IMG/VR virus record: IMGVR_UViG_3300027759_000046
Span: 189,138-253,137 of that record
Direction: 5' to 3' (one strand)
DNA length: 64,000 nt
The translations under genes were made by a program, and so were the position numbers. Below the pieces are notes generated by a model. It did not search any database. It saw nothing but the letters and a program-made list of their open reading frames with translations, and was not told where the DNA came from. This document shows, piece after piece, positions 1,062 to 60,369 of the stretch. Within the stretch, counting starts at the first letter, position 1, and the number at the start of each line of letters is the position of its first letter.

Positions 1062-1703
1062 ATGTCAAAGATAAAACCTTTCCTTAAACACATCAATGAG
1101 TCAGAAGAGCGCGATGAGAAGTACTCAAGACTTAAAAAATTAGGCCTCACCCAAAACGACGAGCCCGAAGATACGGTGTATGCTCTAAAAGAGGCATTTC
1201 ATAACGACCCACAGATCAAGAGCCTATTGACTCAACTTGACGCAAGAGTTGAAGAACTATTTGCACCAATCATAGACAGAGCCGAAGAGGCTTCTGGCGA
1301 TTGGGAAGATATTCGAATGGACATGTCATGGACCTGGGCCGAGGATATTGCAAACAGTTACATCTACAATCACATTTCAGAATTTGGAGAGTACCTCGAA
1401 GAATCCGAAGAACACCCAGAGCGTGAGCGTAATATTGAAAGATTAAGAGGACTTGGTCTTGCACCCAAAAAAGATTTTGACGAGCGTTGGGAAGAGCTGA
1501 TGGACGAATGGGGCGGGGATGCTGAGATTAGCCTGGCAATCGATACCTTAAAGGCCAAAACCAGTGCACTCATTGACAAGTACATTGACTTCGACGATGA
1601 CGAAGATCAGCAGCAATGGGAACAACGTCAAGAGTGGATGTACGAACAGAGCGTTGACGATCTTGGCTGGTTGGAATACATGATCAGTAGCGGATCTCTA
1701 TAA
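1062..1703 (+). CDS. acidic putative internal head protein with two internal repeats
   Basis: ATG at 1062 gives MSKIKPFLKHINE leader; AATAAATAA upstream at 1032-1040; RLKKLGL and RLRGLGL repeat units. Confidence 0.6.
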   Translation: MSKIKPFLKHINESEERDEKYSRLKKLGLTQNDEPEDTVYALKEAFHNDPQIKSLLTQLDARVEELFAPIIDRAEEASGDWEDIRMDMSWTWAEDIANSYIYNHISEFGEYLEESEEHPERERNIERLRGLGLAPKKDFDERWEELMDEWGGDAEISLAIDTLKAKTSALIDKYIDFDDDEDQQQWEQRQEWMYEQSVDDLGWLEYMISSGSL

Positions 1704-1733
1704 TAAATAATCAAACAAAAAGTATAAATTCAA

Positions 1734-2540
1734 ATGAAACACACAATCATTAAAGACTTCAAAGGTTGGAACGTGCTAATGGAAAATGCAGGATTCATCG
1801 GTGAAGAAACGGTTGGAACCGCAGGTTCAGCTGGAACAGCCGGCACAGCAGGTACAACCGGAACAGCTGGTTCAGCTGGCACAGCAGGCGCTACCTCCGC
1901 TCCATTAACTGCAATCACGGCAGCAGACGGCGCGCTAACTGCTGAGGATATTAAAAAGGTACAGGCAATTGTCTACAATGCCCCACTAACTGACACTAAA
2001 TCATGTGACGGTAAAGTTGGCCCAAACACAAAGGCAAAAATTAAAGAGTTTAGAACTGCAAACGGCATCACTGACGAAACAGTTGAACCCAATCAGACTA
2101 CGGTAGGTCCAAAAACCTTGGCTAAGATGATTGAAAAAATTACTGCAGGATTTACGCCAGGCGGAACCGCTGGAACAGCTGGAACAGCCGGTGCAACTGG
2201 TGTATTCGATCAACGTAATGCAACTGACGACCAGGCTGCAACCAAGATTTGCGACATGATTGTTGCTAAATTCAAGGACACTGCTTTCTGGCAACCATTT
2301 AAAGGAACGTTTAACGATGATGAAGGTCAAGCAGGTTTTGCATATAACAATTGGTACACGACCGAGGTTATGCCTCTAATTAAGACGCTTAGACAAGGCG
2401 ATCCAAACATTGCTCGATTAGAAGCAGCCGATGCGGCAGTTCGTCAAAAATTAGCCGGCGGAATGGCAAACGATTCAGCTTCTTGGCAAATCACAACGCT
2501 TAACGGCGAGATGAAATATCAAGTAGACACAGATTTCTAA
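1734..2540 (+). CDS. putative virion protein with GTAG repeats and peptidoglycan-binding domain
   Basis: MKHTIIKDF...ME leader; GTAGSAGTAG tracts; DGKVGPNTKAKIKEFRTANGI resembles PG_binding_1. Confidence 0.65.
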   Translation: MKHTIIKDFKGWNVLMENAGFIGEETVGTAGSAGTAGTAGTTGTAGSAGTAGATSAPLTAITAADGALTAEDIKKVQAIVYNAPLTDTKSCDGKVGPNTKAKIKEFRTANGITDETVEPNQTTVGPKTLAKMIEKITAGFTPGGTAGTAGTAGATGVFDQRNATDDQAATKICDMIVAKFKDTAFWQPFKGTFNDDEGQAGFAYNNWYTTEVMPLIKTLRQGDPNIARLEAADAAVRQKLAGGMANDSASWQITTLNGEMKYQVDTDF

Positions 2541-2555
2541 AATAAACCAAGCTTA

Positions 2556-4334
2556 ATGAAGCATACAATTATAAAAGATTACAGGAGCTGGTTGTTTGAA
2601 TCAACTCAGTACATGACAGAAGCGGCTGATCCAAACACGCCTATTGAGACTCTATTACAAAATACTGATCTTGAAGGTCTTTATCAAAGAATCATGTCAA
2701 CCGATGCGGCCTCTAAGGGTTTACCTAATTACGCTAACGTAATGCAATGGTGGCATCAAGGCGGACCGGATTTGGGATTATGGAAGTCTCTATTTAAAGC
2801 GGGCGGCGAAGCCAAACGCGATAAGGTAAATTCAGCTCGTAGCATGTACTATTGGTTGGGAGGTTTTGCAACTAAGGGTCGTAGTGCTCAAAGTGCAGGC
2901 AAAGCAAACTATATCAAAAACGTTGAAGACTTCTGTACAGCAGTTAAGACCAATGCTCCAGCAATAGTTGCCGCAGTTAACGCATTCCCAAAACCTGCTG
3001 AAAAAACACGTTACGCAGGTTGGAACGAAGCAGCTGCTAAAGCAGATGCAGTTTTGGCTTTCTTACAGACAGCTAAGGCAAAGAGTCTTAACTTAAGCTC
3101 ACAGGCAGCAGCGATGCTAATTCCATACAGTGCAATTGACGGTCAACTATCAGTTAACAATGCACCAACACCGCCAGCAACCTATTTCAAACTTACCGCA
3201 GACACATTCACAAAAGACAAGACTGATGATAATTTATCGGTAACGTCTTATGCTTATCAAACAGGTCAATGGACTCTACAAACAAGCGCGGTAACAACTC
3301 TTCAACAATTACAGACAAACATTGCAACGCTAACATCAGCAATGGCCGATCAAACTAAACTTTCTACATATTTTTCAGCAGATAATACATTAAGCGCTGA
3401 GAATAAGAAAGTTATCCTAGATTTTGTTAACACCAAGGTACAGGCTTATCTTGAAAGAAAGAATAAGGCTCTTAAACCTGGAGAAACGGCAATGACTGTT
3501 GACTCTGCAATTAAAACTGCAACTGACCTTTACATTTCGCCAAATGGTACTAATTTGACTCTATCGCCTGCAACCAAGCAGCCATCACCAGAGCCAATCA
3601 CAGTTTCAGGCTCATATCCTGAAAATCCAAATGGCGATTGGAATTCAGCTGGTGCAAAGAAAGCTACTCAGTTCTTTGGTGACGATAAGATCCAGATTGA
3701 AGCAGGTCCTATTGCGGAAATGACAAACGGTATCAAATCGTATCTAGCTCAAATTAAAGCGATGGGCGCTCAAATTACTGGCGTAAAAATCTGGGGTATT
3801 TCATCTACTAGTGCTGTACCAAGTTCATACGATCCTGCAACAAAGGGTCCAAATCCTGACGCAGGCTACACGACTGCAAAGAACGGCCCGCTTGCTCAAG
3901 ACCGTTTGACCTCAATTAAAACTTCTCTACGTCAAATCTTTACTCAAAACGGCGTTACTGATAATTTGATAACGGAAGATGCGACTCAAGATAAAGTTAC
4001 TCCAAACATTGGAGCTGCTTGGACTGAACAAGATAAGGCTAAGTTTGCAAATCGCAAACAGCCAGGTAAAGAGGCTCTACTTAAAGAGTACGACGATAAA
4101 TTTGGCAAATACAAATATGCATTTGCTCGTTTTGAGATTACGTACACAATGACTCAGCAATTTACGGTTACACCACAGGCAGATCCTATTCCAAACTCAG
4201 ACTGGAAAGTTTACATTAACTGGATTGATGAAACTTGGACACCACCGACAATTAGCATTCCAGGAATAGGTTTTAAACCTAAATCTGGAGGTTCTCAAAG
4301 AGATTGGGGAAAAACTGACTGTCCAGTATTCTAA
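2556..4334 (+). CDS. putative virion protein with OmpA-like C-terminal region
   Basis: MKHTIIKDYRSWLFE leader; NGPLAQDRLTSIKTSL resembles the OmpA-like N..L...R motif. Confidence 0.5.
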   Translation: MKHTIIKDYRSWLFESTQYMTEAADPNTPIETLLQNTDLEGLYQRIMSTDAASKGLPNYANVMQWWHQGGPDLGLWKSLFKAGGEAKRDKVNSARSMYYWLGGFATKGRSAQSAGKANYIKNVEDFCTAVKTNAPAIVAAVNAFPKPAEKTRYAGWNEAAAKADAVLAFLQTAKAKSLNLSSQAAAMLIPYSAIDGQLSVNNAPTPPATYFKLTADTFTKDKTDDNLSVTSYAYQTGQWTLQTSAVTTLQQLQTNIATLTSAMADQTKLSTYFSADNTLSAENKKVILDFVNTKVQAYLERKNKALKPGETAMTVDSAIKTATDLYISPNGTNLTLSPATKQPSPEPITVSGSYPENPNGDWNSAGAKKATQFFGDDKIQIEAGPIAEMTNGIKSYLAQIKAMGAQITGVKIWGISSTSAVPSSYDPATKGPNPDAGYTTAKNGPLAQDRLTSIKTSLRQIFTQNGVTDNLITEDATQDKVTPNIGAAWTEQDKAKFANRKQPGKEALLKEYDDKFGKYKYAFARFEITYTMTQQFTVTPQADPIPNSDWKVYINWIDETWTPPTISIPGIGFKPKSGGSQRDWGKTDCPVF

Positions 4335-4888: not shown

Positions 4889-4921
4889 GTAATTATTATA
4901 CTATCTGGAATAAATAAAGGT

Positions 4922-5581
4922 ATGAAACCTTTTAAACTATTGCTAGTACTACTGATTTCGTTTGTACTATTTACATCATTTTCAACTGAGTTTACAGTTA
5001 AAGACAAGATTGTGATCTTGGCTCATGCTGGCTATGTTTCACATTATAGCACAGGTTTAAAATACCCAGTTGAGGTGGAGTGGTGGGATACTAAAGCTCG
5101 ACTGGGCTGCACGACTAAATTTCCTAGAAAAGACCAATTTGCACCAGATCCATTACTACCAGCTGAGACGAGCCTTGCTGATGATTATTCTGGATCAGGT
5201 TTTGATCGAGGTCACATGTGCCCAGCGGCAGATAACCAATGCGATTCTGAATTCTTAACAGAGTGCTTCTATTTTTCAAATATGGCACCTCAATATCATT
5301 CGCTGAACGCTGGGGTCTGGAAAACTCTTGAAACTCGCACCAGAGAATTTGCTGAGCAATTGGACTCAGTTAAGGTTTGGTGCGGCAATATTGGATCGGT
5401 CTCCAAAATCGGAGAGGTTTCAGTACCAGCAAAGTGTTGGAAAGTAATTTACATAAAGAAGACCAAAGTTTGGGAAGCTTACGTTTTTGAAAATACAAAA
5501 GAACAGTCTAAAAAGCTTGATCAATTAAAGGTCAAGGTATCAGACGTTGAAAAATTAACCGGCTTTAAATTTAAACCATGA
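4922..5581 (+). CDS. DNA/RNA non-specific endonuclease (NucA/EndA family) with signal peptide
   Basis: DRGHMCPAAD and FYFSNMAPQ..LNAGVWKTLE motifs; hydrophobic N-terminus. Confidence 0.92.
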   Translation: MKPFKLLLVLLISFVLFTSFSTEFTVKDKIVILAHAGYVSHYSTGLKYPVEVEWWDTKARLGCTTKFPRKDQFAPDPLLPAETSLADDYSGSGFDRGHMCPAADNQCDSEFLTECFYFSNMAPQYHSLNAGVWKTLETRTREFAEQLDSVKVWCGNIGSVSKIGEVSVPAKCWKVIYIKKTKVWEAYVFENTKEQSKKLDQLKVKVSDVEKLTGFKFKP

Positions 5582-5985
5582 AACACATAAAACAATTTAC
5601 TCAATTTGTCAACGAAAACGTTGACTGGAAGCAGCTAACTGAATTAGAGGCGTACGCAGATGGCCTCTTTAATGAGCTTGGTCTTGATGTGGTATTTACA
5701 AAACACTTTAAGGACAGAGTCAACGACGTTCGAAACGGCAACCCGATTACCTATAATGAATTGAAAGCCTTATTCCTAAAGGCTTACTTGAGAGCTGGCG
5801 AACAGATCTCAGAATTACCAGTTGAAACAGAAGCAGTTCTTAAAGATTTAAGTTCAAATCTTAATGCTCCATTCAAAATACAGGACGCACCAGATGATGC
5901 TGACCACACTGAAAACGATATGGTAATGAAGACTATTATGAAGAAAGAAAGATTCATGTCGAGTAACCCGTCTATTGAAGTTTAG
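5578..5985 (+). CDS. leader-tagged hypothetical protein, possible RelE/BECR-like RNase fold
   Basis: MKHIKQFTQFVNE leader; FTKHFKDR and C-terminal MKTIMKK; the fold call is weak. Confidence 0.45.
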   Translation: MKHIKQFTQFVNENVDWKQLTELEAYADGLFNELGLDVVFTKHFKDRVNDVRNGNPITYNELKALFLKAYLRAGEQISELPVETEAVLKDLSSNLNAPFKIQDAPDDADHTENDMVMKTIMKKERFMSSNPSIEV

Positions 5986-6003
5986 CACTTAACCTATTCA
6001 CAT

Positions 6004-6030: not shown

Positions 6031-6053
6031 CTTGTTTAGTGTCCATCGACGAA

Positions 6054-6656
6054 TTACATTTCGTTCTCTTTATTAGCGCCTTTCTTCTGGAAACCAAATG
6101 GTTTAGCAGCAGGCTTTGCAGCCGGTTTACCGAATGGCATTCCTTTTGCAGCAGGTTTTTCGTCTTTCTTAGCGAATGGGTTTCCCTTTGCCGCAGGTTT
6201 ACCGAATGGCATTCCTTTCGCAACAGGTTTAGCTTTAGCTCCTCGTTTTGGGGCCTCTTCCATTTCTTCCTCTTCAGCAGCTTTGCCTTTTTTCTTTGCA
6301 GCAGGCTTTAGATTAGCGAATTTTTTATCAACTTCTTTAAGAGCTTCAATTTGAGCTTTTTTCTTTGCCTCATATAACTCTTCATCAGTCATGCGATTCA
6401 TGTTATGTCTTGAAATTCTGTGTGCATCGTAATCATCTGAATGCATTGCTTGGTCTAACTCACGTTGTGAACTAGTAGACTCTTCGCCACATGCTGTGCA
6501 ATATCCTTCTTCATCAATTTCAGAACCACAACATTGTGAAGTTTCTTCCATTGTATCGCTATCGCCGAATCTATCTTCTTGAGAAAAGGAATCTCCGTGA
6601 TTGGATTCATAATTTTCATTAATGAATTGGGTAAATCTTTTTACTTGATTTTTCAT
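6054..6656 (-). CDS. putative internal head protein with Cys cluster and Lys/Ala/Pro-rich (H1-like) repeat tail
   Basis: start at 6656 gives MKNQVKRFTQFINE; CCGSEIDEEGYCTAC; repeated AKGMPFGKPAAK. Confidence 0.65.
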   Translation of the reverse strand: MKNQVKRFTQFINENYESNHGDSFSQEDRFGDSDTMEETSQCCGSEIDEEGYCTACGEESTSSQRELDQAMHSDDYDAHRISRHNMNRMTDEELYEAKKKAQIEALKEVDKKFANLKPAAKKKGKAAEEEEMEEAPKRGAKAKPVAKGMPFGKPAAKGNPFAKKDEKPAAKGMPFGKPAAKPAAKPFGFQKKGANKENEM

Positions 6657-6675
6657 AGTATTTAAACTGTTTATT

Positions 6676-7116
6676 TTATGGTTCGATATCTTCTTCCTCT
6701 TCAGTATCATCTGAAAGGCCTAACATTTCGTCATTGAATTTATTGAAAGCTGATTCAGCTTCTTTCATGGTCTTATTTAAAGTAATAAGCTCATCTTTTA
6801 GAGTCTGAACTTTCTCTTTGTCTTCGTCAGTTGCTGGATTTTTACGAGCATCTTCTGGCATTTCCAAGAACTCTTTTTGTTTATCTTTAAATGCTTTAAC
6901 TGCATCTTTACGAGCTTGGTCAAGTTTCTTGAATTTACCAATCTCAGTTGAATCATCAATATCTTCAACCGAAGTAGGCTCAGCATCAGTCGGTGCAGCT
7001 GGTTCAGCAGGAGCGTCCATTTCAGCTGGTGTTAAGTCAGCAGGAGGATCAATTGCAGGTCCAGTAGCATCAACCTTTTCAGATTCTTCAAGCCATTGAT
7101 TGTACCTATAAATCAT
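6676..7116 (-). CDS. acidic coiled-coil hypothetical protein
   Basis: MIYRYNQWLEE leader-like N-terminus; GATAAATAAA upstream (7137-7146, -). Confidence 0.6.
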   Translation of the reverse strand: MIYRYNQWLEESEKVDATGPAIDPPADLTPAEMDAPAEPAAPTDAEPTSVEDIDDSTEIGKFKKLDQARKDAVKAFKDKQKEFLEMPEDARKNPATDEDKEKVQTLKDELITLNKTMKEAESAFNKFNDEMLGLSDDTEEEEDIEP

Positions 7117-7173: not shown

Positions 7174-7950
7174 ATGAAATTACTAACATTCAATACATGG
7201 TTATCTGAGACGGCCAGGCCACTAGTAAAGCTTAGTGATCTTGATATTAACCGTCGATATAAAGATGAGAGGTATGAGTATGAACTATTTCCAAGATTTA
7301 GACGACTTAAAGCCAGAATCAACGAACTAGATAAAATGCCAACTCTTGAGCACTGGTTCGCAATGATGCAGAACTCAGACGCCGAATTCTATACGCTAGT
7401 TCAAACAGGCGAACTTGGTCAACCTGATGTCAGAGAACTATTTAGAGACCTAACGGGTCGTCGTGCAGCAAAGATGGCAAAGTATAATCTAGAAGAGAAC
7501 AAAGGAGAAATCGCTGCATGGCAATGTAGCATAGACCCTTCTTGGAAAATGATTGCGCTATGGCCGACTGATCCGGGCTATGAGGACGCTGCGAAGATTT
7601 TTGACTATTTAGGAATTGCGTTTGGCGACCTTTCTTCTAAAACTATTTACGTAGACGGTGTTCAGCTTGAACAGGAAAATTTAACAAAGGATCACCTACT
7701 TGCAATTGAAGCTCATGAAATTAGTCATGGCATATTAAGTCATCAATCGTCAAATCGAGAATTAGCGGAATACGATGAGAGACAGGAAAGAGAAGCCGAT
7801 TGGATGGGAGTCAGAATCCTTGATGCAATGGATTATCAAATGGCGGCTCAAATCCTAGAAGATCGATATGAAACTCACTATGGCGAAAGTTCAGAAGATC
7901 TTGATAACACCGAAAAATTAGAATCTCAATTGCGAGATTATTTAAAATAA
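7174..7950 (+). CDS. HEXXH zinc metallopeptidase (ImmA/IrrE-like), leader-tagged
   Basis: start at 7174 gives MKLLTFNTWLSE; AHEISH...QEREAD zincin motif. Confidence 0.75.
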   Translation: MKLLTFNTWLSETARPLVKLSDLDINRRYKDERYEYELFPRFRRLKARINELDKMPTLEHWFAMMQNSDAEFYTLVQTGELGQPDVRELFRDLTGRRAAKMAKYNLEENKGEIAAWQCSIDPSWKMIALWPTDPGYEDAAKIFDYLGIAFGDLSSKTIYVDGVQLEQENLTKDHLLAIEAHEISHGILSHQSSNRELAEYDERQEREADWMGVRILDAMDYQMAAQILEDRYETHYGESSEDLDNTEKLESQLRDYLK

Positions 7951-8264: not shown

Positions 8265-8864
8265 ATGAAAACTTTTTCTCAATTCATTAATGAGAATTCA
8301 CAGGATTCACAGCACTATGAATTAATGGCCTCTCTTGCAAATGCAATGAACACTGCCGGTCGATATGCAAACGCGTCAGTAAATCAAGCAGACAATTCAA
8401 TTCGACTCTCATCAAACTGGGAGCTTGACACTATGAAAATTAGCGATCTTGGAAGAGTTGAACCGACTGCCTATTATGTTGCAAATCTTGTTCCAAAATT
8501 TAATAAGGAGGCCTCTACTAATCTGAGCAGACTAATTCAATTAGGGCTAGGAAATGTAAGCGATTTGCTTGAAGGATTTACTATAACTACCGCCCTTAGT
8601 GTAGACGTTTACGAAGTTGAAGGTTATGAATTCAAAGACGGCCCAGACACTAATGAGTATACTCTAGAAGAGTTAGACATTCAGGGGTTCTTTGATACTG
8701 GTGATATTAGTGGAGCGGGCGAAGCTCTTGTTGAATGGTGGGATGAAACTGCTAATGAATATGGCTATATGCTTTATACACGAGTAGCAGAAGACCTTGA
8801 ATCGTATATTGCAAGCCGCCAACCTGATGAAGAAGACGATGAGTTGGAAGATGAAGGGTGGTGA
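8265..8864 (+). CDS. acidic putative internal head protein
   Basis: MKTFSQFINE, very close to the T4 capsid-targeting sequence MKTYQEFIAE; RLIQLGL motif. Confidence 0.6.
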   Translation: MKTFSQFINENSQDSQHYELMASLANAMNTAGRYANASVNQADNSIRLSSNWELDTMKISDLGRVEPTAYYVANLVPKFNKEASTNLSRLIQLGLGNVSDLLEGFTITTALSVDVYEVEGYEFKDGPDTNEYTLEELDIQGFFDTGDISGAGEALVEWWDETANEYGYMLYTRVAEDLESYIASRQPDEEDDELEDEGW

Positions 8865-10902: not shown

Positions 10903-12888
10903 ATGATTAATTCATTTATTCAAATGGTTAACGAATCAGCCGATTTAGAACTAGGCCAAGAAGGTCTTGTTGATGAGATGGGAGTTAAACGCCCAGAAAG
11001 TTTAACAGGCAGTGAAATGGGAACAATTCGTCAATCTTCAATTCAACACAGGCAAAATCAGACAAACGTTCCACGTAAAAAGAACTATCACGAATTGGTC
11101 GTGGAGCTAGTTGACGATTTAAAGCGTATGCCTAGAACAGAGATCACAATGGAGAAACCAGCAAATTCTCGATACTATTATCCAAAGTTACCGGCTGCTA
11201 TTGTGCAAAAAATGCGCGAAGCCTATGCACTAAACTCTAGATCATTTGTCCAAGATATTGGAAATTGGAGAGACATTAGTCCAAACGATTCAGACGCAAT
11301 CTATTTTAAGATTGAAGCACCTAGTGATCATCAACGAAGCCATTTTCCAAACGGCGGAATTCCGCCAATGCTTAGAGGAACTGGACTAGGTTACAAATTA
11401 TATAGAGCCCTACTTAAAACAGCCGGATATCTTTCTTCAAACCGTTCTGGATCAAATGAAAAAGATAAAGCTTGGGGTTCTCTACTTGCTCAAAAAACAA
11501 ATCCTGACGGAACTTTGTCAGTAGATGACGCTCACGCAATTATTGGTAAGTCCAATTGGATGGCACTAGACAAGGGAATGTCTGACCGTGGGAAAATAGA
11601 TGCAGCTGTCAGTTTCATAACTAACACAGTCGGAGTTCAACGAACTCAGCCCGATAAATTTGATATGGATGATGAGCTATTGTCAATTCTACCGGACGAT
11701 TTTCTGGTTAAATTGGACCCAGCTTATTTGCAATCACTAGTTGATGATGGTCGTATTACTCAGGAAAAATACAGACAAATTGAAGATTCAAGAAGTGAAG
11801 CTGACCGTCGTGAAAGAGAACGTCAAGCTCAAGCTGAAATTGAAGCACGCGAACGTCGTGCTAGAGAAGAGGCTGAGACTCGTCGTCGTTTAGCTAGTCG
11901 AATCCAACAGTTTGGTGCAGACCCAGACGCTGAATGGAGTGTTGGCGATTATATCGTAGTTAAGTCTTACCTATTTGACGCTTCATATAACGGTTTACCT
12001 ATTCGTCGAGTGGTTTCACAAAACGGCGGTACTTATATAGCTGTTAAAATCTCAGATGCAATTAGAATTGATAATGGCGATATTACTCCAAATCAAGCAA
12101 ACGATAATCGATCAACATCTGACAAATCACAATGGGTTAAAGTAAACCTTGATCAAATCCCAGATCTAACGCGAGTTAATTTAACTGACGCTGAGCGTAC
12201 GTACCTTGAGGGTCAAATGGATCCCGAAACTGCGGCTAGAGCAAGAGCAGAACGTGAGGAAGCTGAACGCGAAAGACGCGAAGCTGAACGTAGAGAAAAC
12301 GAGGAACGTGCTAGAAATAGAGAAACATTCGGTTCTTTACCCGATAATGCTGGTGAATTAAAGACTTCTCAAACTGCGAGAAATAATGGCTCAATCAGAG
12401 AAGCTGATCTATTAAAGAAATTTAGAGATTCATATTTCACAGATAGAATGGAGATCATTGTAATGGGACCGCAACAGAGAGAAGCTCTAAGAAATTCATT
12501 TGGTGTTCCAGTATTCATTGCATGGACCGGTTCATCAAGACGTCCAATACCAGCGTCTCTTGATACAATAAATAATGATCCACAATCTGTTAAATTAACG
12601 AATGCTGTAACCGGCTTTACAATTGATGCACCGTTTACTGGTCTTGGCCTAATGGCATATCCATTAACTGAAGTAACAGTTGACGATAAAATGAGAGCTA
12701 GAGCAGGAACTCACTATTATATCTCTGGCCATAAGAATGCCTTTGGTATTCTCGCAAAGAGTGATTATGGTGCAGTTAATACATCTGCTCAGAAATTTAT
12801 CTACGTTAAAGCATACGGATACGGAGAACGTAGCGTATCAGTTAGATTAGATTTATTAAGAAAGATTGGAACTCCTACTGAGCTGTAA
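10903..12888 (+). CDS. leader-tagged multidomain protein with GNAT acetyltransferase-like motif
   Basis: MINSFIQMVNE; IPPMLRGTGLGYKLYRALL matches the GNAT acetyl-CoA motif R/QxxGxG; Glu/Arg-rich coiled-coil linkers. Confidence 0.6.
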   Translation: MINSFIQMVNESADLELGQEGLVDEMGVKRPESLTGSEMGTIRQSSIQHRQNQTNVPRKKNYHELVVELVDDLKRMPRTEITMEKPANSRYYYPKLPAAIVQKMREAYALNSRSFVQDIGNWRDISPNDSDAIYFKIEAPSDHQRSHFPNGGIPPMLRGTGLGYKLYRALLKTAGYLSSNRSGSNEKDKAWGSLLAQKTNPDGTLSVDDAHAIIGKSNWMALDKGMSDRGKIDAAVSFITNTVGVQRTQPDKFDMDDELLSILPDDFLVKLDPAYLQSLVDDGRITQEKYRQIEDSRSEADRRERERQAQAEIEARERRAREEAETRRRLASRIQQFGADPDAEWSVGDYIVVKSYLFDASYNGLPIRRVVSQNGGTYIAVKISDAIRIDNGDITPNQANDNRSTSDKSQWVKVNLDQIPDLTRVNLTDAERTYLEGQMDPETAARARAEREEAERERREAERRENEERARNRETFGSLPDNAGELKTSQTARNNGSIREADLLKKFRDSYFTDRMEIIVMGPQQREALRNSFGVPVFIAWTGSSRRPIPASLDTINNDPQSVKLTNAVTGFTIDAPFTGLGLMAYPLTEVTVDDKMRARAGTHYYISGHKNAFGILAKSDYGAVNTSAQKFIYVKAYGYGERSVSVRLDLLRKIGTPTEL

Positions 12889-13681: not shown

Positions 13682-14056
13682 ATGCTTAAGAAATTTGATG
13701 AATTTAATGAAACCTTGAATGAGGGTTTTTGGGACTGGTTGACAGGCAAGTCTGAAAAGGGAGAAAAGAAGGACAAAGTGACCAGTGCTAAAGAGGGTCC
13801 AATTGATGCAAAGGTAGCAGAATATTATAAAACGCTACAGGATTTTGCTGATGCTGGCAAATCTATTGAAGTTCAGTCACTTGGCAATATGTCTTATTCT
13901 AAAATGGTTGAAGATATTCAACTTGCGTTGGAATTCCTAGGTTATAAACTTGAAAAATACGGAGTTGATGGATACTTTGGCCCAGAGACTTCTGCTGCCA
14001 TTGTTAAATTCAATCAAGATACCTTAAATAAAATACCAGATTCTCAACATGATTAA
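13682..14056 (+). CDS. peptidoglycan-binding domain protein, leader-tagged
   Basis: MLKKFDEFNETLNE; IQLALEFLGY...GVDGYFGPETSAAIVKFN. Confidence 0.8.
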   Translation: MLKKFDEFNETLNEGFWDWLTGKSEKGEKKDKVTSAKEGPIDAKVAEYYKTLQDFADAGKSIEVQSLGNMSYSKMVEDIQLALEFLGYKLEKYGVDGYFGPETSAAIVKFNQDTLNKIPDSQHD

Positions 14057-15299
14057 AGGATTCGATCAATTTACTGGAAAGATTAATGAAGCTTCAAACG
14101 GTCAGCTAAATGATGCTGACCTAGTTCCAATTCAGCCACTCGGTAAGAGCGGCGGAAACCATAAATTAAATTCACAAGCAGCAAAAGCATACGAAGAAAT
14201 GAAGAAGGCTGCTGAGGCAGACGGTGTAACTTGGGGTATTACTGACTCGTATCGAGATTATGAAGCCCAAGTTGATGTTGCTGCACGTAAAGGTCTTTAC
14301 AAAAATGGAGGATTGGCGGCAGTTCCTGGAACATCAAATCACGGATGGGGTAGTGCTCTAGATCTTGACCTAAATTCTGAAGCTCAAGAATGGTTAAAGA
14401 AGAACGCTGAAAAATTTGGATTCACAAATATTCCAAGAGAACCTTGGCATTGGGAACATAAAGCCAGTGTTGAGCTAGCAAAGACTGGAAAAGAAGGCAC
14501 TGGATCTTCAGCTAAAGTCGGATCAGTGCTAATTGATTCAGATCTAATTAAGAGACTGATTGCAAAATTAAAAGAGAAGAATTTCAGCCAAAAGGATCTA
14601 GACCAGTACATTGCTAAGTCTTCGTCAGGTAAAGGCGCAAACTTTAAAAGCGGTGAAAAGTTTCCTGCTGAAAATATGAAAGCCATTGAAAAAGCAATGG
14701 ATGATCATGGTATAACAAATGAATATGCTAGAAAGGCAATTCTTGGAGTTATTTCAAAAGAATCTCCAGGTTTAAAATCTGAAATAAGTTATTCTGGAAC
14801 AAGTGCTGCTCGAATTAGAGAAGTTTTCCCAAGTAAATTTGGTGATAAATCTGATTCTGAGATTGACGACATTAAGAAAGACGATGCTATGTTTTGGGAT
14901 GTAGTGTATGGCGGTAAATACGGAAACACTGAACCTGGAGACGGTTCAAAGTACCGAGGCCGTGGTTTTAATGGAATAACATTCAAATCAAATTACGAAA
15001 ACTTACAGAGAATTTACGACAGGTCTGGCGCTAAGGTTGGCAATATTGATATTGTTAAGAATCCTGAACTTCTTGAAAAACCTGAAGTTGCAGCCGAATT
15101 CGCTGTTCTATATTTCATGGATACTTTTAAACGTCACGGTAAGGATGTGAATTCCTACACTGATTTAGAGTCAGCCGTTACTGATTACGTTCAAGCAAAT
15201 GCAGGCTGGGGAACTTCTTTAGCTGGTGCAGTCACATCAAAGGGTTTACAAAAGGCAATGGACTTTGCGAAATCATTAGATACAGACCAAATTGCTTAA
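14049..15299 (+). CDS. M15B (VanY-like) peptidase fused to GH19-like glycoside hydrolase
   Basis: SYR..EAQ, PGTSNHGWGSALD and EPWHWE; GNTEPGDGSKYRGRGFNGITFKSNY; MIKGFDQF..INE leader. Confidence 0.88.
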   Translation: MIKGFDQFTGKINEASNGQLNDADLVPIQPLGKSGGNHKLNSQAAKAYEEMKKAAEADGVTWGITDSYRDYEAQVDVAARKGLYKNGGLAAVPGTSNHGWGSALDLDLNSEAQEWLKKNAEKFGFTNIPREPWHWEHKASVELAKTGKEGTGSSAKVGSVLIDSDLIKRLIAKLKEKNFSQKDLDQYIAKSSSGKGANFKSGEKFPAENMKAIEKAMDDHGITNEYARKAILGVISKESPGLKSEISYSGTSAARIREVFPSKFGDKSDSEIDDIKKDDAMFWDVVYGGKYGNTEPGDGSKYRGRGFNGITFKSNYENLQRIYDRSGAKVGNIDIVKNPELLEKPEVAAEFAVLYFMDTFKRHGKDVNSYTDLESAVTDYVQANAGWGTSLAGAVTSKGLQKAMDFAKSLDTDQIA

Positions 15300-15301: not shown

Positions 15302-16219
15302 ATGAAACACCTACTTGAATATAAAATATTTGAATCAGCTGAGAGGATTATTGATGCAACGGCTGGCGCTGGAACAGATGAGGAATCTCTGGTGCAAGCG
15401 ATTGCTGGCATTCAAACGCCTGAAGACCTATCTAAAATTGATGCAGAACTTGCTTCAAACCTAAATTCTGAATATAAAAGCGTAAAAGATGCAATAGCTG
15501 GAGAGCTTGGAGTTTTTGATACAGTTTACAAGGACGCAATTGCTCAAAAGTTTAGTCAGTTAGGTTTGCCTAACTACTTAGAAGACGGAATAATTCCAGT
15601 TAAATCAGATAAAGTAGAAAAGACTCAAATTGAAAAACCTATCAAATCTGCCATGGCTGAAACACAAACTCTTTCTCAAGGAAAAATCAATATTAATTCA
15701 AATAAATCTGCTCCGTTAATTGTTGTATTCGGTGGAATTGATGTGGGTGGACGATCGAGTGGTTCTTATATGTATGACTATTTTAAAGAGGCTACTTTAT
15801 CGAAAGCGACAACATTTATTGCAAATTCTTCAAAAATAGACGGCTCTAAAGCCTGGTCTGAAATATCTGGTTTAAACTTAACTCCATCTAAAAAGATTCT
15901 CTACCTATTCTCTGGTGGATATTTACCTGGGATGAGCTTGCTAAATAAGGTAGCTGCATCCGAGTGGGCTGCAATTTATCTAGTTGATATTTGGATAGGT
16001 CAAAACTCAAATACTGAGAATTTCTATACAAAACTCACAGCGGACTTTCCTGACAAAGTAAAATACTACTATACTGGCGGAGAGAATTCAGCAGGTGGAT
16101 CCAATAACCTAAAGGCAAAGAAGGAAATGATTGACTCTGTTAGCTATTCAAAGGGTGCAGGCTCTCACATGGGAGCAAATGATATTGCGGTAAACGACCT
16201 TAATGGAGATATCTCCTAG
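15302..16219 (+). CDS. annexin-like repeat fused to alpha/beta-hydrolase-like domain
   Basis: GAGTDEESLVQAI...AIAGELG annexin-like; VVFGG and LFSGG hydrolase-like; MKHLLEYKIFE leader. Confidence 0.5.
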   Translation: MKHLLEYKIFESAERIIDATAGAGTDEESLVQAIAGIQTPEDLSKIDAELASNLNSEYKSVKDAIAGELGVFDTVYKDAIAQKFSQLGLPNYLEDGIIPVKSDKVEKTQIEKPIKSAMAETQTLSQGKININSNKSAPLIVVFGGIDVGGRSSGSYMYDYFKEATLSKATTFIANSSKIDGSKAWSEISGLNLTPSKKILYLFSGGYLPGMSLLNKVAASEWAAIYLVDIWIGQNSNTENFYTKLTADFPDKVKYYYTGGENSAGGSNNLKAKKEMIDSVSYSKGAGSHMGANDIAVNDLNGDIS

Positions 16220-16842
16220 TCTTCTTTAGTTGATTTAGTATTTCCGAACTTAGATAAGAATATGTCGGCAGTCTTCTCAAGAACACTATTGAATGCTGTG
16301 TCAGATTCACGAATTGATTTAAAATAGTCAACGAAACCTACCATATCTGCAATTTTATAAGTATTAATCTTGACCATATCAGATGAATTTCCGTCAATTG
16401 AGACAAATGAATCTCCTGTTACTTTTAAGACAATACCAGTATGACCTTTTCCAGATGAAGCGCCGCCTCGTGACTTAATAAAGACTTGACCCGGCTGAAC
16501 CTTTGAGGGATCGCGTGAGTCTATCTTATTTTCAGCAGGTGCAGAATTCCAATGAGACATAACTGCTGCAGTTTTAGGTAGAGGATTTTCAATACTAAGT
16601 TTTGAACAAAGCTCATCGAACATTGCATAAACGAATGCCATGCACCATGGATTACCTGCGCCTAGTCCAAGCTTACCGAGCATACCCTTAACCATTGACC
16701 CGTCATTATTTCCTTCTTCTTTTTTCCCAACGTAATCTGCTAACACATGACCAAATGTTTCGGCTGCATTCGTTGCAGTATCAGGTTTAATCGCTAGTTC
16801 AGCTTCAGTTATGAATTGATTAAAATCTTTAATAAGTTTCAT
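16216..16842 (-). CDS. CHAP-domain amidase/peptidase, leader-tagged
   Basis: PWCMAFV, GHTGIV and IDGNS motifs; MKLIKDFNQFITE. Confidence 0.9.
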   Translation of the reverse strand: MKLIKDFNQFITEAELAIKPDTATNAAETFGHVLADYVGKKEEGNNDGSMVKGMLGKLGLGAGNPWCMAFVYAMFDELCSKLSIENPLPKTAAVMSHWNSAPAENKIDSRDPSKVQPGQVFIKSRGGASSGKGHTGIVLKVTGDSFVSIDGNSSDMVKINTYKIADMVGFVDYFKSIRESDTAFNSVLEKTADIFLSKFGNTKSTKED

Positions 16843-19797: not shown

Positions 19798-20389
19798 TGT
19801 GTTTTTGTATTGTTTGTTTAATCCAGTCAAAATTAACTGGAGTATAATCGGTCAAGCATGCGCATACTGAATAGGCATTCTTGATTGGATGCAAAACTTG
19901 GTGTGAGTGACCATATAGGTGATATGATCCGTGAAATTTTCCATTGAATTCCAAGATTGGATAGTGGAACAGCACAACTCGACGAAAACCGATTTTCTGT
20001 TCTGGGTCCGGAAAGAAGATCTCTTCGTAATCTTTAAAGTCAACGATTTTTGCAACTGAACTAAGTTCCCTGAACCAGTGCTCATCGATATGAGTATCGT
20101 GATTGCCTTTTAACCAAACTATATTACCCTTTAACTGGCTAAAAATCCATTTTAGATAACTTAATTTAATTCGGTGCATTGAGGCATCTCCTAGGAAGAA
20201 AACAGTATCATCCTCCTGTACAACAGAATTCCAACGAGCAATGATCTCATTATCGTGCTCCTCAATTGATTGGAAATTATGCAAACCTTCTTCAAATCGC
20301 AATACGTTATTGTGATCAAAGTGGGGATCGCTTATGAACCAGGTTTTTGCTGGATCGAATATTTTGTTCTGTGGTATTTGTCCGCTCAT
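19748..20389 (-). CDS. calcineurin-like metallophosphoesterase
   Basis: SDPH, LGD, GNHD, HYP and GHSH motifs. Confidence 0.92.
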   Translation of the reverse strand: MSGQIPQNKIFDPAKTWFISDPHFDHNNVLRFEEGLHNFQSIEEHDNEIIARWNSVVQEDDTVFFLGDASMHRIKLSYLKWIFSQLKGNIVWLKGNHDTHIDEHWFRELSSVAKIVDFKDYEEIFFPDPEQKIGFRRVVLFHYPILEFNGKFHGSYHLYGHSHQVLHPIKNAYSVCACLTDYTPVNFDWIKQTIQKHNEGLNRLGESGVQPTN

Positions 20390-56364: not shown

Positions 56365-56370
56365 ATAATA

Positions 56371-58301: not shown

Positions 58302-58401
58302 CGGTAACGGACTTCTTTTTGATTATTTATCAGCCCAATCTTTTCTTTGCAAAACCATGACCTTGGATAAATACTTTTAGTATAATACTTTTATACTACA
58401 T

Positions 58402-58770: not shown

Positions 58771-58777
58771 TGTCTTA

Positions 58778-58802
58778 AAGGCTTCCATTACGGAAGCCTT
58801 TT
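58778..58802 (+). terminator. intrinsic terminator after tmRNA
   Basis: AAAGGCTTCC-ATTAC-GGAAGCCTTTT. Confidence 0.85.
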
Positions 58803-58834
58803 CTTTTTAGACAGCCTGATTGATAAATAAGAGT

Positions 58835-59587
58835 ATGAAGGCACTTAACACCGACGATATTTTTTTAAGGAATTTAACAATAGCTCTACTTGATCTCCTG
58901 AATGGATCAATGACACTTTCTCTGTCTAGAGACGATCATAAAGAGACATTCTCTGTTCCATTTCTCTATAATTTTGGAACTGATGAGGGTTTCTTAAAGG
59001 ATTTTTATATTGGACTCCCAGACAACTGTCAAATCCCAGTAGCCGAAGGCACTTACGATATTATTCCAAGAGGAATTGTTACCCTAGGATCATTTCAGGT
59101 AAAATCATCAGATATTACAAATCGATTCATTCGTGGACAGTACTCCGAATTGGAACGCGGACCAAACGATCAAAACGTTTTAACTGGATATTCTGCTCAA
59201 CTCTATTCTCTACCAATGTCAGTTAAGTTTGACGTAAAGATTATTTGCGATAACTTAAATAAAGCATTCAAGATTGCTGAGAGAATGTTAGACATTAATT
59301 ACGCAAATCGTGTAATGTATTTTCAATACAATGGAGTTCGTATTCCGGCTCAATTCCAGTTTCCAACAAATGAAACGGTTGACAAGGTTTACAAATTTAC
59401 AATGAATGAAAATAACAAGATCAATGTGAGTCTTTCAATTGATGTTGAGACCTATTTCCCAAGCTTTGAGCAGAGTTCTAAGAGGCTTAGCACAAATGTT
59501 ATGGAAAGAGTTAATATCAATAAAAAGGACGATACTGGAAATAATATGACAAGCAGTTGGGTTGATCAAAATACACCTATCATTTAA
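58835..59587 (+). CDS. tail terminator/sheath stabiliser (T4 gp15-like)
   Basis: VPFLY, IPRG and PMSVKFDVKIICDNLNKAFKIAERM pattern; GATAAATAA at 58822. Confidence 0.7.
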   Translation: MKALNTDDIFLRNLTIALLDLLNGSMTLSLSRDDHKETFSVPFLYNFGTDEGFLKDFYIGLPDNCQIPVAEGTYDIIPRGIVTLGSFQVKSSDITNRFIRGQYSELERGPNDQNVLTGYSAQLYSLPMSVKFDVKIICDNLNKAFKIAERMLDINYANRVMYFQYNGVRIPAQFQFPTNETVDKVYKFTMNENNKINVSLSIDVETYFPSFEQSSKRLSTNVMERVNINKKDDTGNNMTSSWVDQNTPII

Positions 59588-60369
59588 TGAAGTACTTATT
59601 AGAATTTAAAACATTTACAATTACTGAAGGCGGTAACGCTTTTCCTGATGCACAAAGCCTTGATCGTGGCGCGGTTGAACCGGCTTTTGCTAAATTCCAA
59701 GATGCAATGTCAAATGTATTTGGCAAAGCTGAACTTGAATTAATTGGTTCATGGAAACAAAAAGAAGTATCTGGTGATCTAGATACTCTATTCTATTCTG
59801 ACTTAACTCTTCCTGAGATCTCAGCAAAAGTTCAAGAAGCAGGATACGAAACCAAGATATTTTATGGATTTAATATTGTGTCCGTTAAATTTGAAATTTC
59901 ACCAGAGCATTTTGTTCAATTTGATATGTTCGTTAGGCCGATGGACACCAACCGTGATGTAAACGATTTGTTCTATAAATCAACTGATGAAGAACGGTAT
60001 TCAACAAAGCATCGTGTCTTTTTGATCTTTTGTGCGCTAGATTCTATGAAGTTTGATAAGATTGAAAAAGACGGTGTGTTAACTCATTTTAAAGGTTATA
60101 TGCTTCGACCTGACGGTCTCTATCAATTCACGAAAGAGATGAAGAAGATTAATTATAAGATTATGGATCGCCAAAAGTTAACCGACGACCTTGATCAAAT
60201 TTCGTTGATCTTATTTGGTAAAGTCTATCCGTATCAACAATGGAATACTTACGAAAAGACTCTCACCTTGCTTGAGAAGAATCCTAAATTAGACATGAAG
60301 ACTATTCTTGACGAATATCGTGCTAAATTGGATGAAGAAGGTCTTGTGGTTCCAGGTGGAATCAGTTAA
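59587..60369 (+). CDS. Pol-beta-superfamily nucleotidyltransferase, leader-tagged
   Basis: MKYLLEFKTFTITEGGN; LIGS..SGDLD..VQFD. Confidence 0.78.
   Translation: MKYLLEFKTFTITEGGNAFPDAQSLDRGAVEPAFAKFQDAMSNVFGKAELELIGSWKQKEVSGDLDTLFYSDLTLPEISAKVQEAGYETKIFYGFNIVSVKFEISPEHFVQFDMFVRPMDTNRDVNDLFYKSTDEERYSTKHRVFLIFCALDSMKFDKIEKDGVLTHFKGYMLRPDGLYQFTKEMKKINYKIMDRQKLTDDLDQISLILFGKVYPYQQWNTYEKTLTLLEKNPKLDMKTILDEYRAKLDEEGLVVPGGIS

What the first reader, a model, noticed from the sequence alone, without database searches (positions are those of the whole stretch)
1062..60369. About 20 unrelated genes share a T4 capsid-targeting-like N-terminal leader: a tagged cargo library for the phage head
Seen: N-termini of the form MKx(1-4)[K/T]x[F/Y]xx[F/W](I/L/V)(N/T/F/S)E occur on MSKIKPFLKHINE (1062), MKHTIIKDFKGWNVLME (1734), MKHTIIKDYRSWLFE (2556), MKHIKQFTQFVNE (5578), MKNQVKRFTQFINE (6656-), MIYRYNQWLEE (7116-), MKLLTFNTWLSE (7174), MKTFSQFINE (8265), MINSFIQMVNE (10903), MLKKFDEFNETLNE (13682), MIKGFDQFTGKINE (14049), MKHLLEYKIFE (15302), MKLIKDFNQFITE (16842-), MKNIKSFTDFLQINE (21450-), MKRHVQIFENFE (23849), MKSFKSFDDFINE (32834-) and MKYLLEFKTFTITE (59587). 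Weaker versions occur at 31603-, 32947, 35209-, 36131- and 38506-. The leader is absent from thyA, ligase, uvsE, terminase and baseplate genes. Established: T4 internal proteins carry the capsid-targeting sequence MKTYQEFIAE, which the prohead protease cuts after Glu. Inference: this phage uses a portable address label to load many enzymes (PG hydrolases, NTases, GNAT, ATP-grasp, metalloprotease, Nudix) into the head for injection, at a scale well beyond T4's three internal proteins.
Basis: partly seen in the sequence, partly recalled or inferred. Interest (0 to 1): 0.9.

Follow-up and report, generated by a model that had tools for sequence, protein, structure and literature searches.

The report
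Head-targeting leader on forty phage genes
About 40 otherwise unrelated genes of this 253-kb uncultured T4-related phage start with the same 10-17-residue tag, which matches the signal phage T4 uses to load proteins into its head at every functionally mapped position. The phage therefore probably packs dozens of proteins where T4 packs three, though no experiment has shown this yet.

Summary
All 17 listed N-termini and the 5 weaker ones sit where stated. The whole genome (253,137 bp; the window is its last 64 kb) holds about 35 clear and 5 weak copies. A strict pattern hits 21 of 321 ORF starts but only 1 of 1,273 internal Met positions.

Beyond the tag the proteins share no detectable similarity, apart from one pair. 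Synonymous codons vary at the conserved residues, so selection acts on the peptide.

The phage has T4-type head genes: an S77 prohead protease fused to a scaffold, a gp23-type capsid protein and a T4-type portal. Its capsid protein carries the same (L)NE|S site. A matrix built from these leaders picks out T4's own IPII, IPIII and IPI. The four conserved leader positions are the four that mutagenesis mapped in T4 as targeting (4, 7) and processing (8, 10) determinants.

The tag is widespread in uncultured T4-like phages and in two huge phages (20 and 32 copies). Homologues without the tag begin where it ends.

A new point: the scaffold domain contains 11 tandem 14-residue units with the same Y-x-x-Y-[LVI]-x-E core.

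Packaging, cleavage and injection remain untested. Most of the putative cargo has no Pfam or PHROG match.

The parts
1062..1703 (+). tagged gene, 213 aa, leader MSKIKPFLKHINE|S; very acidic (net -32); no Pfam/PHROG match
   Evidence: orthologue in G001 keeps the leader
1734..2540 (+). tagged gene, 268 aa, leader MKHTIIKDFKGWNVLME|N; weak collagen/tail-fibre-like repeat hits
2556..4334 (+). tagged gene, 592 aa, leader MKHTIIKDYRSWLFE|S; no family match
5578..5985 (+). tagged gene, 135 aa, leader MKHIKQFTQFVNE|N; phrog_23027 (unknown function)
6054..6656 (-). tagged gene, 200 aa, leader MKNQVKRFTQFINE|N (top PSSM score); no family match
6676..7116 (-). tagged gene, 146 aa, leader MIYRYNQWLEE|S; acidic; leader identical in G001
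7174..7950 (+). tagged gene, 258 aa, leader MKLLTFNTWLSE|T
8265..8864 (+). tagged gene, 199 aa, leader MKTFSQFINE|N, the 10-residue form closest to T4 MKTYQEFIAE; acidic (net -28)
10903..12888 (+). tagged gene, 661 aa, leader MINSFIQMVNE|S; only a weak GNAT lead
13682..14056 (+). tagged gene, 124 aa, leader MLKKFDEFNETLNE|G; PG_binding_1 domain
14049..15299 (+). tagged gene, 416 aa, leader MIKGFDQFTGKINE|A; VanY / peptidase M15 domain
15302..16219 (+). tagged gene, 305 aa, leader MKHLLEYKIFE|S; the only tagged protein similar to another one beyond the leader (to the lysozyme gene at genome 171610)
16216..16842 (-). tagged gene, 208 aa, leader MKLIKDFNQFITE|A; CHAP peptidase. At least 52 of 63 homologues carry the leader; 5 short ones lack it
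20386..21450 (-). tagged gene, 354 aa, TTG start, leader (M)KNIKSFTDFLQINE|M; no family match
23849..24328 (+). tagged gene, 159 aa, short leader MKRHVQIFENFE|R
31626..32834 (-). tagged gene, 402 aa, leader MKSFKSFDDFINE|S; weak peptidoglycan-binding lead only
59587..60369 (+). tagged gene, 260 aa, leader MKYLLEFKTFTITE|G; polymerase-beta-type nucleotidyltransferase fold by language-model and structure neighbours
30065..31603 (-). weak leader MRHINIGNYAILNE|S, 512 aa. The leader is kept in G001 (79% identity) while the rest is only 39% identical, so it is probably genuine
32947..34071 (+). weak leader MKYLFEFAQYSAQ, with aromatic spacing but no [ILV]-x-Glu; YheC/D ATP-grasp enzyme
34730..35209 (-). 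weak leader MIDTFDNFTKP, no Glu site; NUDIX hydrolase
35400..36131 (-). weak leader MIKKFDDFQVYD|T, with Asp where Glu is expected. In T4, Asp at CTS position 10 allows targeting but blocks processing
36131..38506 (-). weak leader MKYISSAEEFFGTNE|D, 791 aa; not conserved in G001

Best explanation
The leader is a T4-type capsid-targeting sequence (CTS). It is a short N-terminal amphipathic peptide whose two aromatic residues dock the newly made protein into the scaffolding core of the prohead. Its [I/L/V]-x-Glu end is then cut by the phage's S77-family prohead protease, which frees the mature protein inside the head.

In this phage lineage the tag has spread to about 40 otherwise unrelated genes, roughly 11-12% of all ORFs. 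These include peptidoglycan-degrading enzymes, nucleotidyltransferases, small basic proteins and many proteins with no Pfam or PHROG match.

Shown here: the motif, its enrichment, its portability, its conservation, the presence of the T4-type machinery, and matching sites in the capsid protein and the protease.

Inferred: docking, cleavage after Glu, and presence in virions.

More weakly inferred: ejection into the host.
For: 1. Enrichment and position: 21 of 321 ORF starts against 1 of 1,273 internal Met positions.
2. Portability: among 40 tagged proteins only one pair is similar beyond the leader.
3. Peptide-level selection: synonymous codons at the conserved F, I/L, N and E are mixed, close to genome-wide usage.
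4. Machinery: Peptidase_S77 (plus S80) domain in a 660-aa protease-scaffold ORF, gp23-type capsid protein, T4-type portal, and homologues of 17 T4 genes in all.
5. Same site in known substrates: the capsid protein has AGSLNE|STAPG where T4 gp23 has GSFLTE|AEIGG, and the site is kept in relatives. The protease N-terminus has QLFIIE| where T4 gp21 has QLLIE|.
6. Positive control: the matrix built from these leaders ranks T4 IPIII and IPII among the top hits of six-frame T4 ORFs, with IPI in the top ten.
7. Mapped residues: in IPIII, residues 4 and 7 carry targeting and residues 8 and 10 carry processing (PMC9026906). These are the four conserved leader positions.
8. Orthologues: 33 of 34 in the related 252.6-kb contig keep the leader. 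Identity is 80% in the leader, 67% in the next 20 aa and 71% in the rest. In the CHAP family F7, F10 and E13 are 94-100% conserved and are followed by a hypervariable linker.
9. Natural minus-tag homologues start where the leader ends: pelagiphage Eistla gp44/gp45, encoded between the scaffold and capsid genes, and the short CHAP proteins.
10. Late-promoter-like motif: ATAAATAA lies upstream of 19 of 40 tagged genes against 36 of 281 untagged genes (p = 1.4e-6), and also upstream of the protease gene. A gp55-like ORF is present.
11. Distribution: the exact MKxFxQFINE coding pattern hits more than 120 IMG/VR contigs, always at ORF starts, and 70 of 120 short loci carry T4 core genes.
Against: - There is no virion proteome, N-terminal sequencing or cultured relative. 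The nearest cultured phages, PTm1 and pT24, have no such leaders, so no data can be transferred.
- The protease is only about 25% identical to gp21 over 117 aa. Its specificity is inferred.
- P1' is varied (S, N, A, K, D, G, T, M).
- T4 internal proteins are basic, whereas many tagged proteins here are strongly acidic.
- Peptidoglycan hydrolases are unusual head contents for a myovirus.
- 21 of 40 tagged genes lack the promoter-like motif directly upstream; some lie in operons behind another tagged gene.
- Absence of the leader from 17 T4-core homologues is not significant by itself, because only 1-2 would be expected.
- 50 of the 120 IMG/VR loci showed no T4 core gene. They are short, so this is uninformative.
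Confidence: 0.7

Rival explanations
1. The tag does target proteins to the prohead and is cut, but many tagged proteins are not injected cargo. They are expendable parts of the assembly core (like T4 gp22, gp67 and gp68) that are degraded or expelled at maturation.
For: Several tagged proteins are strongly acidic, with net charge -20 to -60, like T4 core proteins and unlike the basic T4 internal proteins. The scaffold domain itself carries the same heptad core 11 times. An acidic 201-aa protein in the head module has an internal copy of the motif.
Against: Recognisable enzymes (CHAP, VanY, lysozyme, nucleotidyltransferases) make little sense as scaffold. Most tagged proteins have few further [ILV]-x-E clusters. 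Six are missing from the close relative, which fits accessory cargo better than assembly parts.
Confidence: 0.15
2. The leader is an N-terminal amphipathic helix with a role unrelated to the capsid. It could be a handle for a chaperone, for membrane association, or for timed proteolytic activation or inactivation of enzymes such as the wall hydrolases.
For: The AF2 model shows a short helix detached from the domain. Four tagged proteins act on or bind peptidoglycan. In other contigs the tag sits on metabolic-looking enzymes such as a RimK ATP-grasp and a cytidylyltransferase-kinase.
Against: This does not explain the invariant Glu and the P3 aliphatic residue, the identical site in the capsid protein, the recovery of T4 internal proteins by the matrix, or the restriction to T4-superfamily contigs. 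The leader has no hydrophobic core like the true signal peptides in the window. A separate untagged SLT enzyme with a hydrophobic N-terminus is available as the endolysin.
Confidence: 0.08
3. The pattern is an artefact: chance in an AT-rich genome, a DNA-level repeat spread by recombination, a translation-initiation signal, or the remnant of one paralogous family.
For: MK starts are common in AT-rich phages. Two neighbouring genes (1734 and 2556) share an almost identical leader, which looks like a local duplication.
Against: The enrichment is about 90-fold over internal Met positions. Synonymous codons vary. The motif is anchored to the Glu rather than at a fixed distance from the start codon, since leaders are 10-17 aa long. 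There is no similarity beyond the leader. The tag is conserved across homologues that share only 40-60% identity.
Confidence: 0.01

Closest known systems
Capsid targeting sequence (CTS) of T4 internal proteins IPI, IPII and IPIII (Mullaney and Black 1996, as reviewed in PMC9026906, PMC3012670 and PMC9958956)
   Same: It is a 10-20-residue N-terminal tag with aromatic residues at positions 4 and 7, an aliphatic residue at 8 and Glu at 10. It sits on otherwise unrelated proteins in a phage with a gp21-family protease, a gp23-type capsid and a T4-type portal. The best copy here, MKTFSQFINE, compares with T4's MKTYQEFIAE.
   Different: There are about 40 tagged genes instead of 3 (4 strict hits in 150 kb of T4). 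P2 is usually Asn, Thr or Ser rather than Ala. Leaders are often extended to 13-17 aa. The cargo includes enzymes and acidic proteins, not only small basic ones. Protease and scaffold are fused in one 660-aa ORF. Function is untested here.
Polymorphic CTS-bearing internal proteins of other T-even phages (T2, T6 and others; PMC9026906, PMC3012670)
   Same: The idea that the CTS is the only conserved part of a rapidly changing set of head-packaged, host-directed proteins. Six tagged genes here have no orthologue in the close relative.
   Different: Those sets are a handful of small basic proteins per phage. Here the set is an order of magnitude larger, and it also occurs in huge phages of 462 and 640 kb.
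Processed head and ejection proteins of phiKZ-like giant phages (SPN3US gp245 protease; PMC5694885, PMC10052503)
   Same: Many head proteins are cut after Glu by a related protease. The protease ORF here also matches Peptidase_S80. Those phages carry a large mass of ejected proteins.
   Different: Propeptides there are mostly over 100 residues with no shared short tag. Here the tag is a uniform 10-17-residue leader, and no phiKZ-type virion RNA polymerase or nucleus genes were looked for or seen.
Internal and ejection proteins of T7-like podophages, and the small basic proteins between the scaffold and capsid genes of pelagiphage Eistla
   Same: Eistla gp44 and gp45 are homologous to leader-tagged proteins in T4-like contigs and to the tagged gene at genome 116449-116715.
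   Different: The podophage versions have no leader, and those phages have no prohead protease. The homology begins right after the leader's Glu.

Membership tests
T4-type capsid targeting sequence (CTS) | Lies at the extreme N-terminus and is 10-20 residues long | tested here: met
   Leader length is 10-17 aa, most often 13. There are 21 strict copies at ORF starts against 1 at 1,273 internal Met positions.
T4-type capsid targeting sequence (CTS) | Aromatic residues three apart (IPIII positions 4 and 7), the mapped targeting determinants | tested here: met
   [FY]-x-x-[FW] in all strong copies. The mapping is from PMC9026906. F7 is 94% and F10 is 100% conserved in the CHAP family.
T4-type capsid targeting sequence (CTS) | Aliphatic residue at P3 and Glu at P1 (IPIII positions 8 and 10), the gp21 L/I-x-E processing site | tested here: met
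   [ILV]-x-E ends every strong leader. Glu is 100% conserved in the CHAP family. Three weak copies lack the Glu.
T4-type capsid targeting sequence (CTS) | The phage encodes a gp21-family prohead protease and a T4-type prohead (gp23 capsid, gp20 portal, scaffold) | tested here: met
   PF03420 at 35 bits, PF07068 at 143 bits and PF07230 at 225 bits. S77 and S80 match in a 660-aa protease-scaffold ORF.
T4-type capsid targeting sequence (CTS) | The same cleavage motif occurs in bona fide protease substrates of the same phage (capsid protein propeptide, protease N-terminus) | tested here: met
   SLNE|S at about residue 53 of the capsid protein, kept in G001. Analogous sites are INE|S in PTm1, LTE|A in G003 and T4, and FIIE| in the protease. 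Cleavage itself is inferred.
T4-type capsid targeting sequence (CTS) | The tag is portable: it is attached to unrelated proteins, and homologues exist without it | tested here: met
   One similar pair among 40 proteins. Minus-tag homologues begin after the Glu.
T4-type capsid targeting sequence (CTS) | Tagged proteins are physically incorporated into proheads and the tag is removed after Glu | not testable with these tools
   There is no isolate and no proteome. The cultured distant relatives PTm1 and pT24 lack the leader.
T4-type capsid targeting sequence (CTS) | Mature proteins are ejected into the host with the DNA | not testable with these tools
   Inference from T4 only.
phiKZ/SPN3US-type head protein propeptides | Long N-terminal propeptides (mostly over 100 aa) without a shared short tag, cut at S/A/G-x-E | tested here: not met
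   Leaders here are 10-17 aa and uniform, and P3 is aliphatic.
Sec/lipoprotein signal peptide | Hydrophobic h-region of about 10-15 residues after a basic n-region | tested here: not met
   The leaders are amphipathic and charged, whereas the ORFs at 4331-4888(-) and 4922-5581(+) in the window show classical signal peptides.

The most novel reading that the evidence does not exclude
The leader may be a single copy of the scaffold's own repeat.

The scaffold domain fused to the prohead protease (genome 64429-66411, minus strand) contains 11 tandem 14-residue units, x-I-x-Y-x-x-Y-[LVI]-[AG]-E-x-V-x-K. Their core, aromatic-x-x-aromatic-aliphatic-x-Glu, is the leader's signature.

Cargo would co-assemble with this helical array by mimicry. 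The protease would then cut scaffold and cargo at the same Glu. Any gene that acquires about 10 codons would gain entry to the head.

This would explain how three huge-phage lineages (253, 462 and 640 kb) built libraries of 20-40 tagged proteins. It would also offer a concrete answer to the open question of how a CTS recognises the T4-type core (PMC9958956 calls this mysterious).

Co-occurrence so far:
- Arrays and libraries are both present in G000/G001 and G002, and in degenerate form in LR756500.
- Both are absent from PTm1 and pT24.
- T4 and G003 have 3-4 leaders without such arrays.
Probability: 0.35. Interest if true: 0.85.

Novelty: new variant of a known kind. Interest (0 to 1): 0.7.

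Why it matters
If the tag works as in T4, it gives a sequence-only way to read which proteins an uncultured T4-superfamily phage packs into its head and probably delivers at infection.

Here that is about one gene in nine, most with no Pfam or PHROG match. The set includes wall-degrading enzymes, nucleotidyltransferases and very acidic proteins that could be DNA mimics. That is a ready list of candidate first-minute effectors and counter-defence proteins.

The same tag marks 20-32 genes in two huge phages and hundreds of genes across environmental T4-like contigs. The approach therefore scales to metagenomes.

The match between the tag and the scaffold's tandem repeat makes the unresolved CTS-to-core recognition directly testable. 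The natural diversity of working tags could also widen the T4 protein-delivery toolbox.

Tried and rejected
- Megablast of 22 kb of the window against INPHARED found nothing.
- I hoped to borrow a virion proteome from the nearest cultured phages. PTm1 and pT24 turned out to have no leaders at all.
- A tagged lysozyme-like protein from an IMG/VR locus matched cyanophage S-RIM2 only inside a larger endolysin. That says nothing about the leader.
- Pfam and PHROGs gave nothing for about 30 of the 40 tagged proteins.
- ESM Atlas leads for 10903 (GNAT, score 0.81) and 31626(-) (PG-binding, 0.85) are too weak to use.
- I looked in PTm1 for a lineage-specific alternative leader matching its different scaffold repeat. 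None was enriched.
- TRF finds no DNA-level tandem repeat in the scaffold array. The repeat is visible only in protein.
- The AF2 model of the 660-aa protease-scaffold ORF has low confidence (pLDDT 45). It draws the array as long helices but proves nothing.
- Fetching relatives of the protease-scaffold gave only close kin at 59-100% identity. It could not test co-occurrence across distant lineages.
- Literature searches for the leader strings and for expanded CTS sets found only T4 and SPN3US work.


Full report
**What the window is.** The 64-kb window is the last quarter (189,138-253,137) of a 253,137-bp IMG/VR virus record with 39% G+C and an estimated completeness of 94%. The genome carries a T4-type head module:
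- a Peptidase_S77 (gp21-family) domain, which also matches S80, at the start of a 660-aa ORF at 64429-66411(-);
- a gp23-type major capsid protein at 62731-64410(-);
- a T4-type portal.

tblastn with T4 proteins finds homologues of 17 T4 genes. They include the terminase at window 53684-55630(-) and the DNA ligase at window 28695-29993(-). The capsid protein's nearest database relatives are uncultured huge phages (LR756500, 38%), Lak phages (32%) and Tenacibaculum phages PTm1 and pT24 (28-30%). A Bacteroidota host is therefore likely but not shown.

**Checking the observation.** All 17 N-termini and the 5 weaker ones are present at the stated coordinates. The enrichment figures are:

| Pattern | At N-termini | Comparison |
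|---|---|---|
| Core [FYW]..[FW][ILV][NTSE]E | 18 | 0.11 expected; 6 elsewhere in 79,620 aa |
| Start-anchored strict pattern | 21 of 321 ORFs | 1 of 1,273 internal Met (p = 2.6e-14) |
| Relaxed pattern | 51 | about 9 expected |

After curation I count 35 clear and 5 weak leaders. Eighteen of them lie outside the window. Leaders are 10-17 residues long, and the residue after the Glu is most often S, N or A.

**It is a peptide-level, portable module.** With the first 20 residues removed, all-against-all BLASTP of the 40 proteins finds a single related pair. At the conserved F, I/L, N and E positions the synonymous codons are mixed, close to genome-wide usage. The distance from the start codon to the motif varies. 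This rules out a DNA repeat or a translation signal.

In the related 252.6-kb contig G001, 33 of 34 orthologues keep the leader. Identity is 80% in the leader, 67% in the next 20 residues and 71% in the rest. Six tagged genes have no orthologue there.

The CHAP protein at window 16216-16842(-) has 63 database homologues, and at least 52 carry the leader. Among 35 aligned leader-bearing members at 40-93% identity, F7, F10 and E13 are 94-100% conserved. The next 17 residues are hypervariable with indels. Five short homologues start directly with the CHAP domain. The AF2 model (pLDDT 86 overall) draws the leader as a short, low-confidence helix detached from the domain.

**Link to T4.** I read the T4 record and scored its six-frame ORFs with a matrix built only from this phage's leaders. 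IPIII and IPII (MKTYQEFIAE|A) and the 54-aa gp61.1 (MKTFKEFIKE|D) come out on top, and IPI is in the top ten. According to the review of Black's work, mutagenesis of the IPIII CTS placed targeting at residues 4 and 7 and processing at residues 8 and 10. Asp at position 10 still allowed targeting but blocked cutting (PMC9026906). Those four positions are the four conserved positions of the leader.

The capsid protein here has AGSLNE|STAPG at about residue 53, where T4 gp23 has GSFLTE|AEIGG. Comparable sites occur in G001, PTm1 and G003. The protease N-terminus has QLFIIE| where gp21 has QLLIE|. Cleavage is inferred from these parallels and is not observed.

**Expression context.** The octamer ATAAATAA shares seven bases with the T4 late promoter TATAAATA (the T4 sequence is from my own knowledge). 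It occurs 82 times in the genome. It lies within 60 nt upstream of 19 of 40 tagged genes against 36 of 281 others (p = 1.4e-6). It also precedes the protease-scaffold gene and several large genes with no Pfam match in the window's 38-58-kb block. A weak gp55-like ORF exists (E = 2.7e-4).

**What the cargo is.**
- Pfam gives PG_binding_1 (13682), VanY/M15 (14049) and CHAP (16216-) in the window.
- Elsewhere in the genome it gives Phage_lysozyme, NTP_transf_2 and DUF5824.
- NUDIX (34730-) and a YheC/D ATP-grasp (32947) carry only incomplete leaders without the Glu.
- The protein at 59587 falls among viral polymerase-beta-type nucleotidyltransferases.
- About 30 of the 40 proteins have no Pfam or PHROG match.
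- Several are very acidic, with net charge -20 to -60. Two small ones are very basic, including a repeat protein next to the capsid gene.
- An untagged SLT enzyme with a hydrophobic N-terminus is a plausible endolysin, so the tagged wall enzymes are extra.

**Distribution.** All 123 matches printed from the fetched loci open an ORF, on very diverse proteins. Seventy of the 120 short loci carry T4 core genes, and one 13.8-kb locus has seven tagged ORFs.

Census of strict leaders and scaffold arrays:

| Genome | Size | Strict leaders / ORFs | Scaffold array |
|---|---|---|---|
| This phage (G000) | 253 kb | 21 / 321 | 11 units with period 14 (9 fit the motif) |
| G001 (close relative) | 252.6 kb | 14 / 289 | same array (9 motif matches) |
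| LR756500 | 462 kb | 20 / 670, own flavour MKYIxEYEEFLxE | degenerate array |
| G002 | 640 kb | 32 / 969 | 13 units |
| G003 (typical T4-like) | 214 kb | 3 / 304 | none |
| T4 | first 150 kb | 4 / 243 | none |
| PTm1 | 225 kb | 0 / 339 | none |
| pT24 | 235 kb | 0 / 293 | none |

In T7-like pelagiphage Eistla, two small basic proteins are encoded between the scaffold and capsid genes. They are homologous to leader-tagged proteins of T4-like contigs and to the tagged gene at genome 116449. They have no leader, and the homology starts right after the leader's Glu.

**A new observation: the scaffold repeat.** Residues 287-440 of the protease-scaffold ORF form 11 tandem 14-residue units, x-I-x-Y-x-x-Y-[LVI]-[AG]-E-x-V-x-K. 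Nine of them fit aromatic-x-x-aromatic-aliphatic-x-Glu/Gln.

In the whole proteome [FYW]..[FYW][ILV].E occurs 49 times against 11 expected. Twenty-four of these are in the first 40 residues of ORFs, 7 are in this array and 18 are elsewhere. The co-occurrence of arrays and leader libraries across genomes is shown in the census table above. T4 gp22 has many x-I-A-E sites but no aromatic array.

I propose that the leader mimics one scaffold unit. This is an inference from four independent lineages. The structural model of the array is of low confidence.

**Novelty.** The CTS concept, and the idea that it lets T4-like phages pack varied proteins, are published. I found no paper in the library that reports the FINE-type leader, its spread to tens of genes, its presence in huge phages, or the scaffold-repeat match.

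I rate this a new variant of a known kind. Confidence that the leader is a functional CTS-type propeptide is about 0.7, and confidence that most tagged proteins are injected is lower.

Noticed in passing
outside the window: genome 64429-66411(-), locus L005:4429-6411: The prohead protease is fused to a scaffold domain. Residues 287-440 are 11 tandem 14-aa units with a Y-x-x-Y-[LVI]-[AG]-E core, the same signature as the cargo leader. The array is also present in G001 and G002 and is degenerate in LR756500. It is absent from PTm1 and pT24, which have no leaders.
   Followed up: partly
T4 record NC_000866, 18966-19130(-) (locus L134): T4 gp61.1, a 54-aa hypothetical protein, starts MKTFKEFIKE|D. 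This is a CTS-like N-terminus that scores above IPII and IPIII with the matrix, yet the protein is not annotated as an internal protein.
   Followed up: no
window 4331-4888(-) and 4922-5581(+): Two divergent ORFs start with classical hydrophobic signal peptides, so they are probably secreted or lipoproteins. They lie in the middle of the tagged-gene cluster and show what a real export signal looks like in this genome.
   Followed up: no
whole genome; e.g. upstream of window 1062, 1734, 7116(-), 7174, 10903, 16842(-): The octamer ATAAATAA, usually [AG]ATAAATAA[CT] followed by an A-rich stretch, occurs 82 times (about 19 per strand expected) and mostly 26-33 nt before start codons. It is a likely late promoter related to T4's TATAAATA. 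A weak gp55-like ORF lies at genome 25504-25857(-).
   Followed up: partly
outside the window: genome 62245-62604(-): A 119-aa very basic protein lies next to the capsid gene. It has the leader MKSVLSYEEYLFE|K and internal KPEMADMPKGRG repeats, which makes it the best candidate for a T4-IP-like DNA-associated internal protein.
   Followed up: no
outside the window: genome 59552-60157(-): An acidic 201-aa protein in the head module has a perfect leader-like site (YQEFVNE|N) in its middle, at residue 114. It may be a core protein cut internally.
   Followed up: no
loci L212 (pelagiphage Eistla 26459-26964), L083, L110: Small lysine-rich proteins encoded between the scaffold and capsid genes of a T7-like pelagiphage have leader-tagged homologues in T4-like marine contigs. 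One contig fuses both behind a single leader.
   Followed up: partly
loci L014, L029, L036, L042, L043 and others: In marine T4-like contigs a roughly 400-aa DUF6267 protein carries the leader and often lies in loci that also hold primase gene 61. Atlas neighbours tie DUF6267-containing protein clusters to the polymerase-beta nucleotidyltransferase-fold neighbourhood of window 59587. Tagged RimK ATP-grasp plus Zn-protease and cytidylyltransferase-kinase fusions also occur.
   Followed up: partly
window 60991-63333(-): A 780-aa ORF combines GT4-family and GT9 (heptosyltransferase-like) glycosyltransferase domains, including the 'GT4-conflict' family. It is untagged.
   Followed up: no
window 17092-18234(-): The thymidylate synthase is 380 aa, and the Pfam match spans residues 6-313 for a 266-position model. 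It therefore carries insertions and a C-terminal extension. Its N-terminus matched only the relaxed leader pattern (51 N-terminal hits, about 9 expected by chance), and I did not count it as a leader.
   Followed up: no
outside the window: genome 129297-129800(-): An SLT lytic transglycosylase has a hydrophobic N-terminal segment, like a signal-anchor-release endolysin. It is the only wall enzyme found without the leader.
   Followed up: partly
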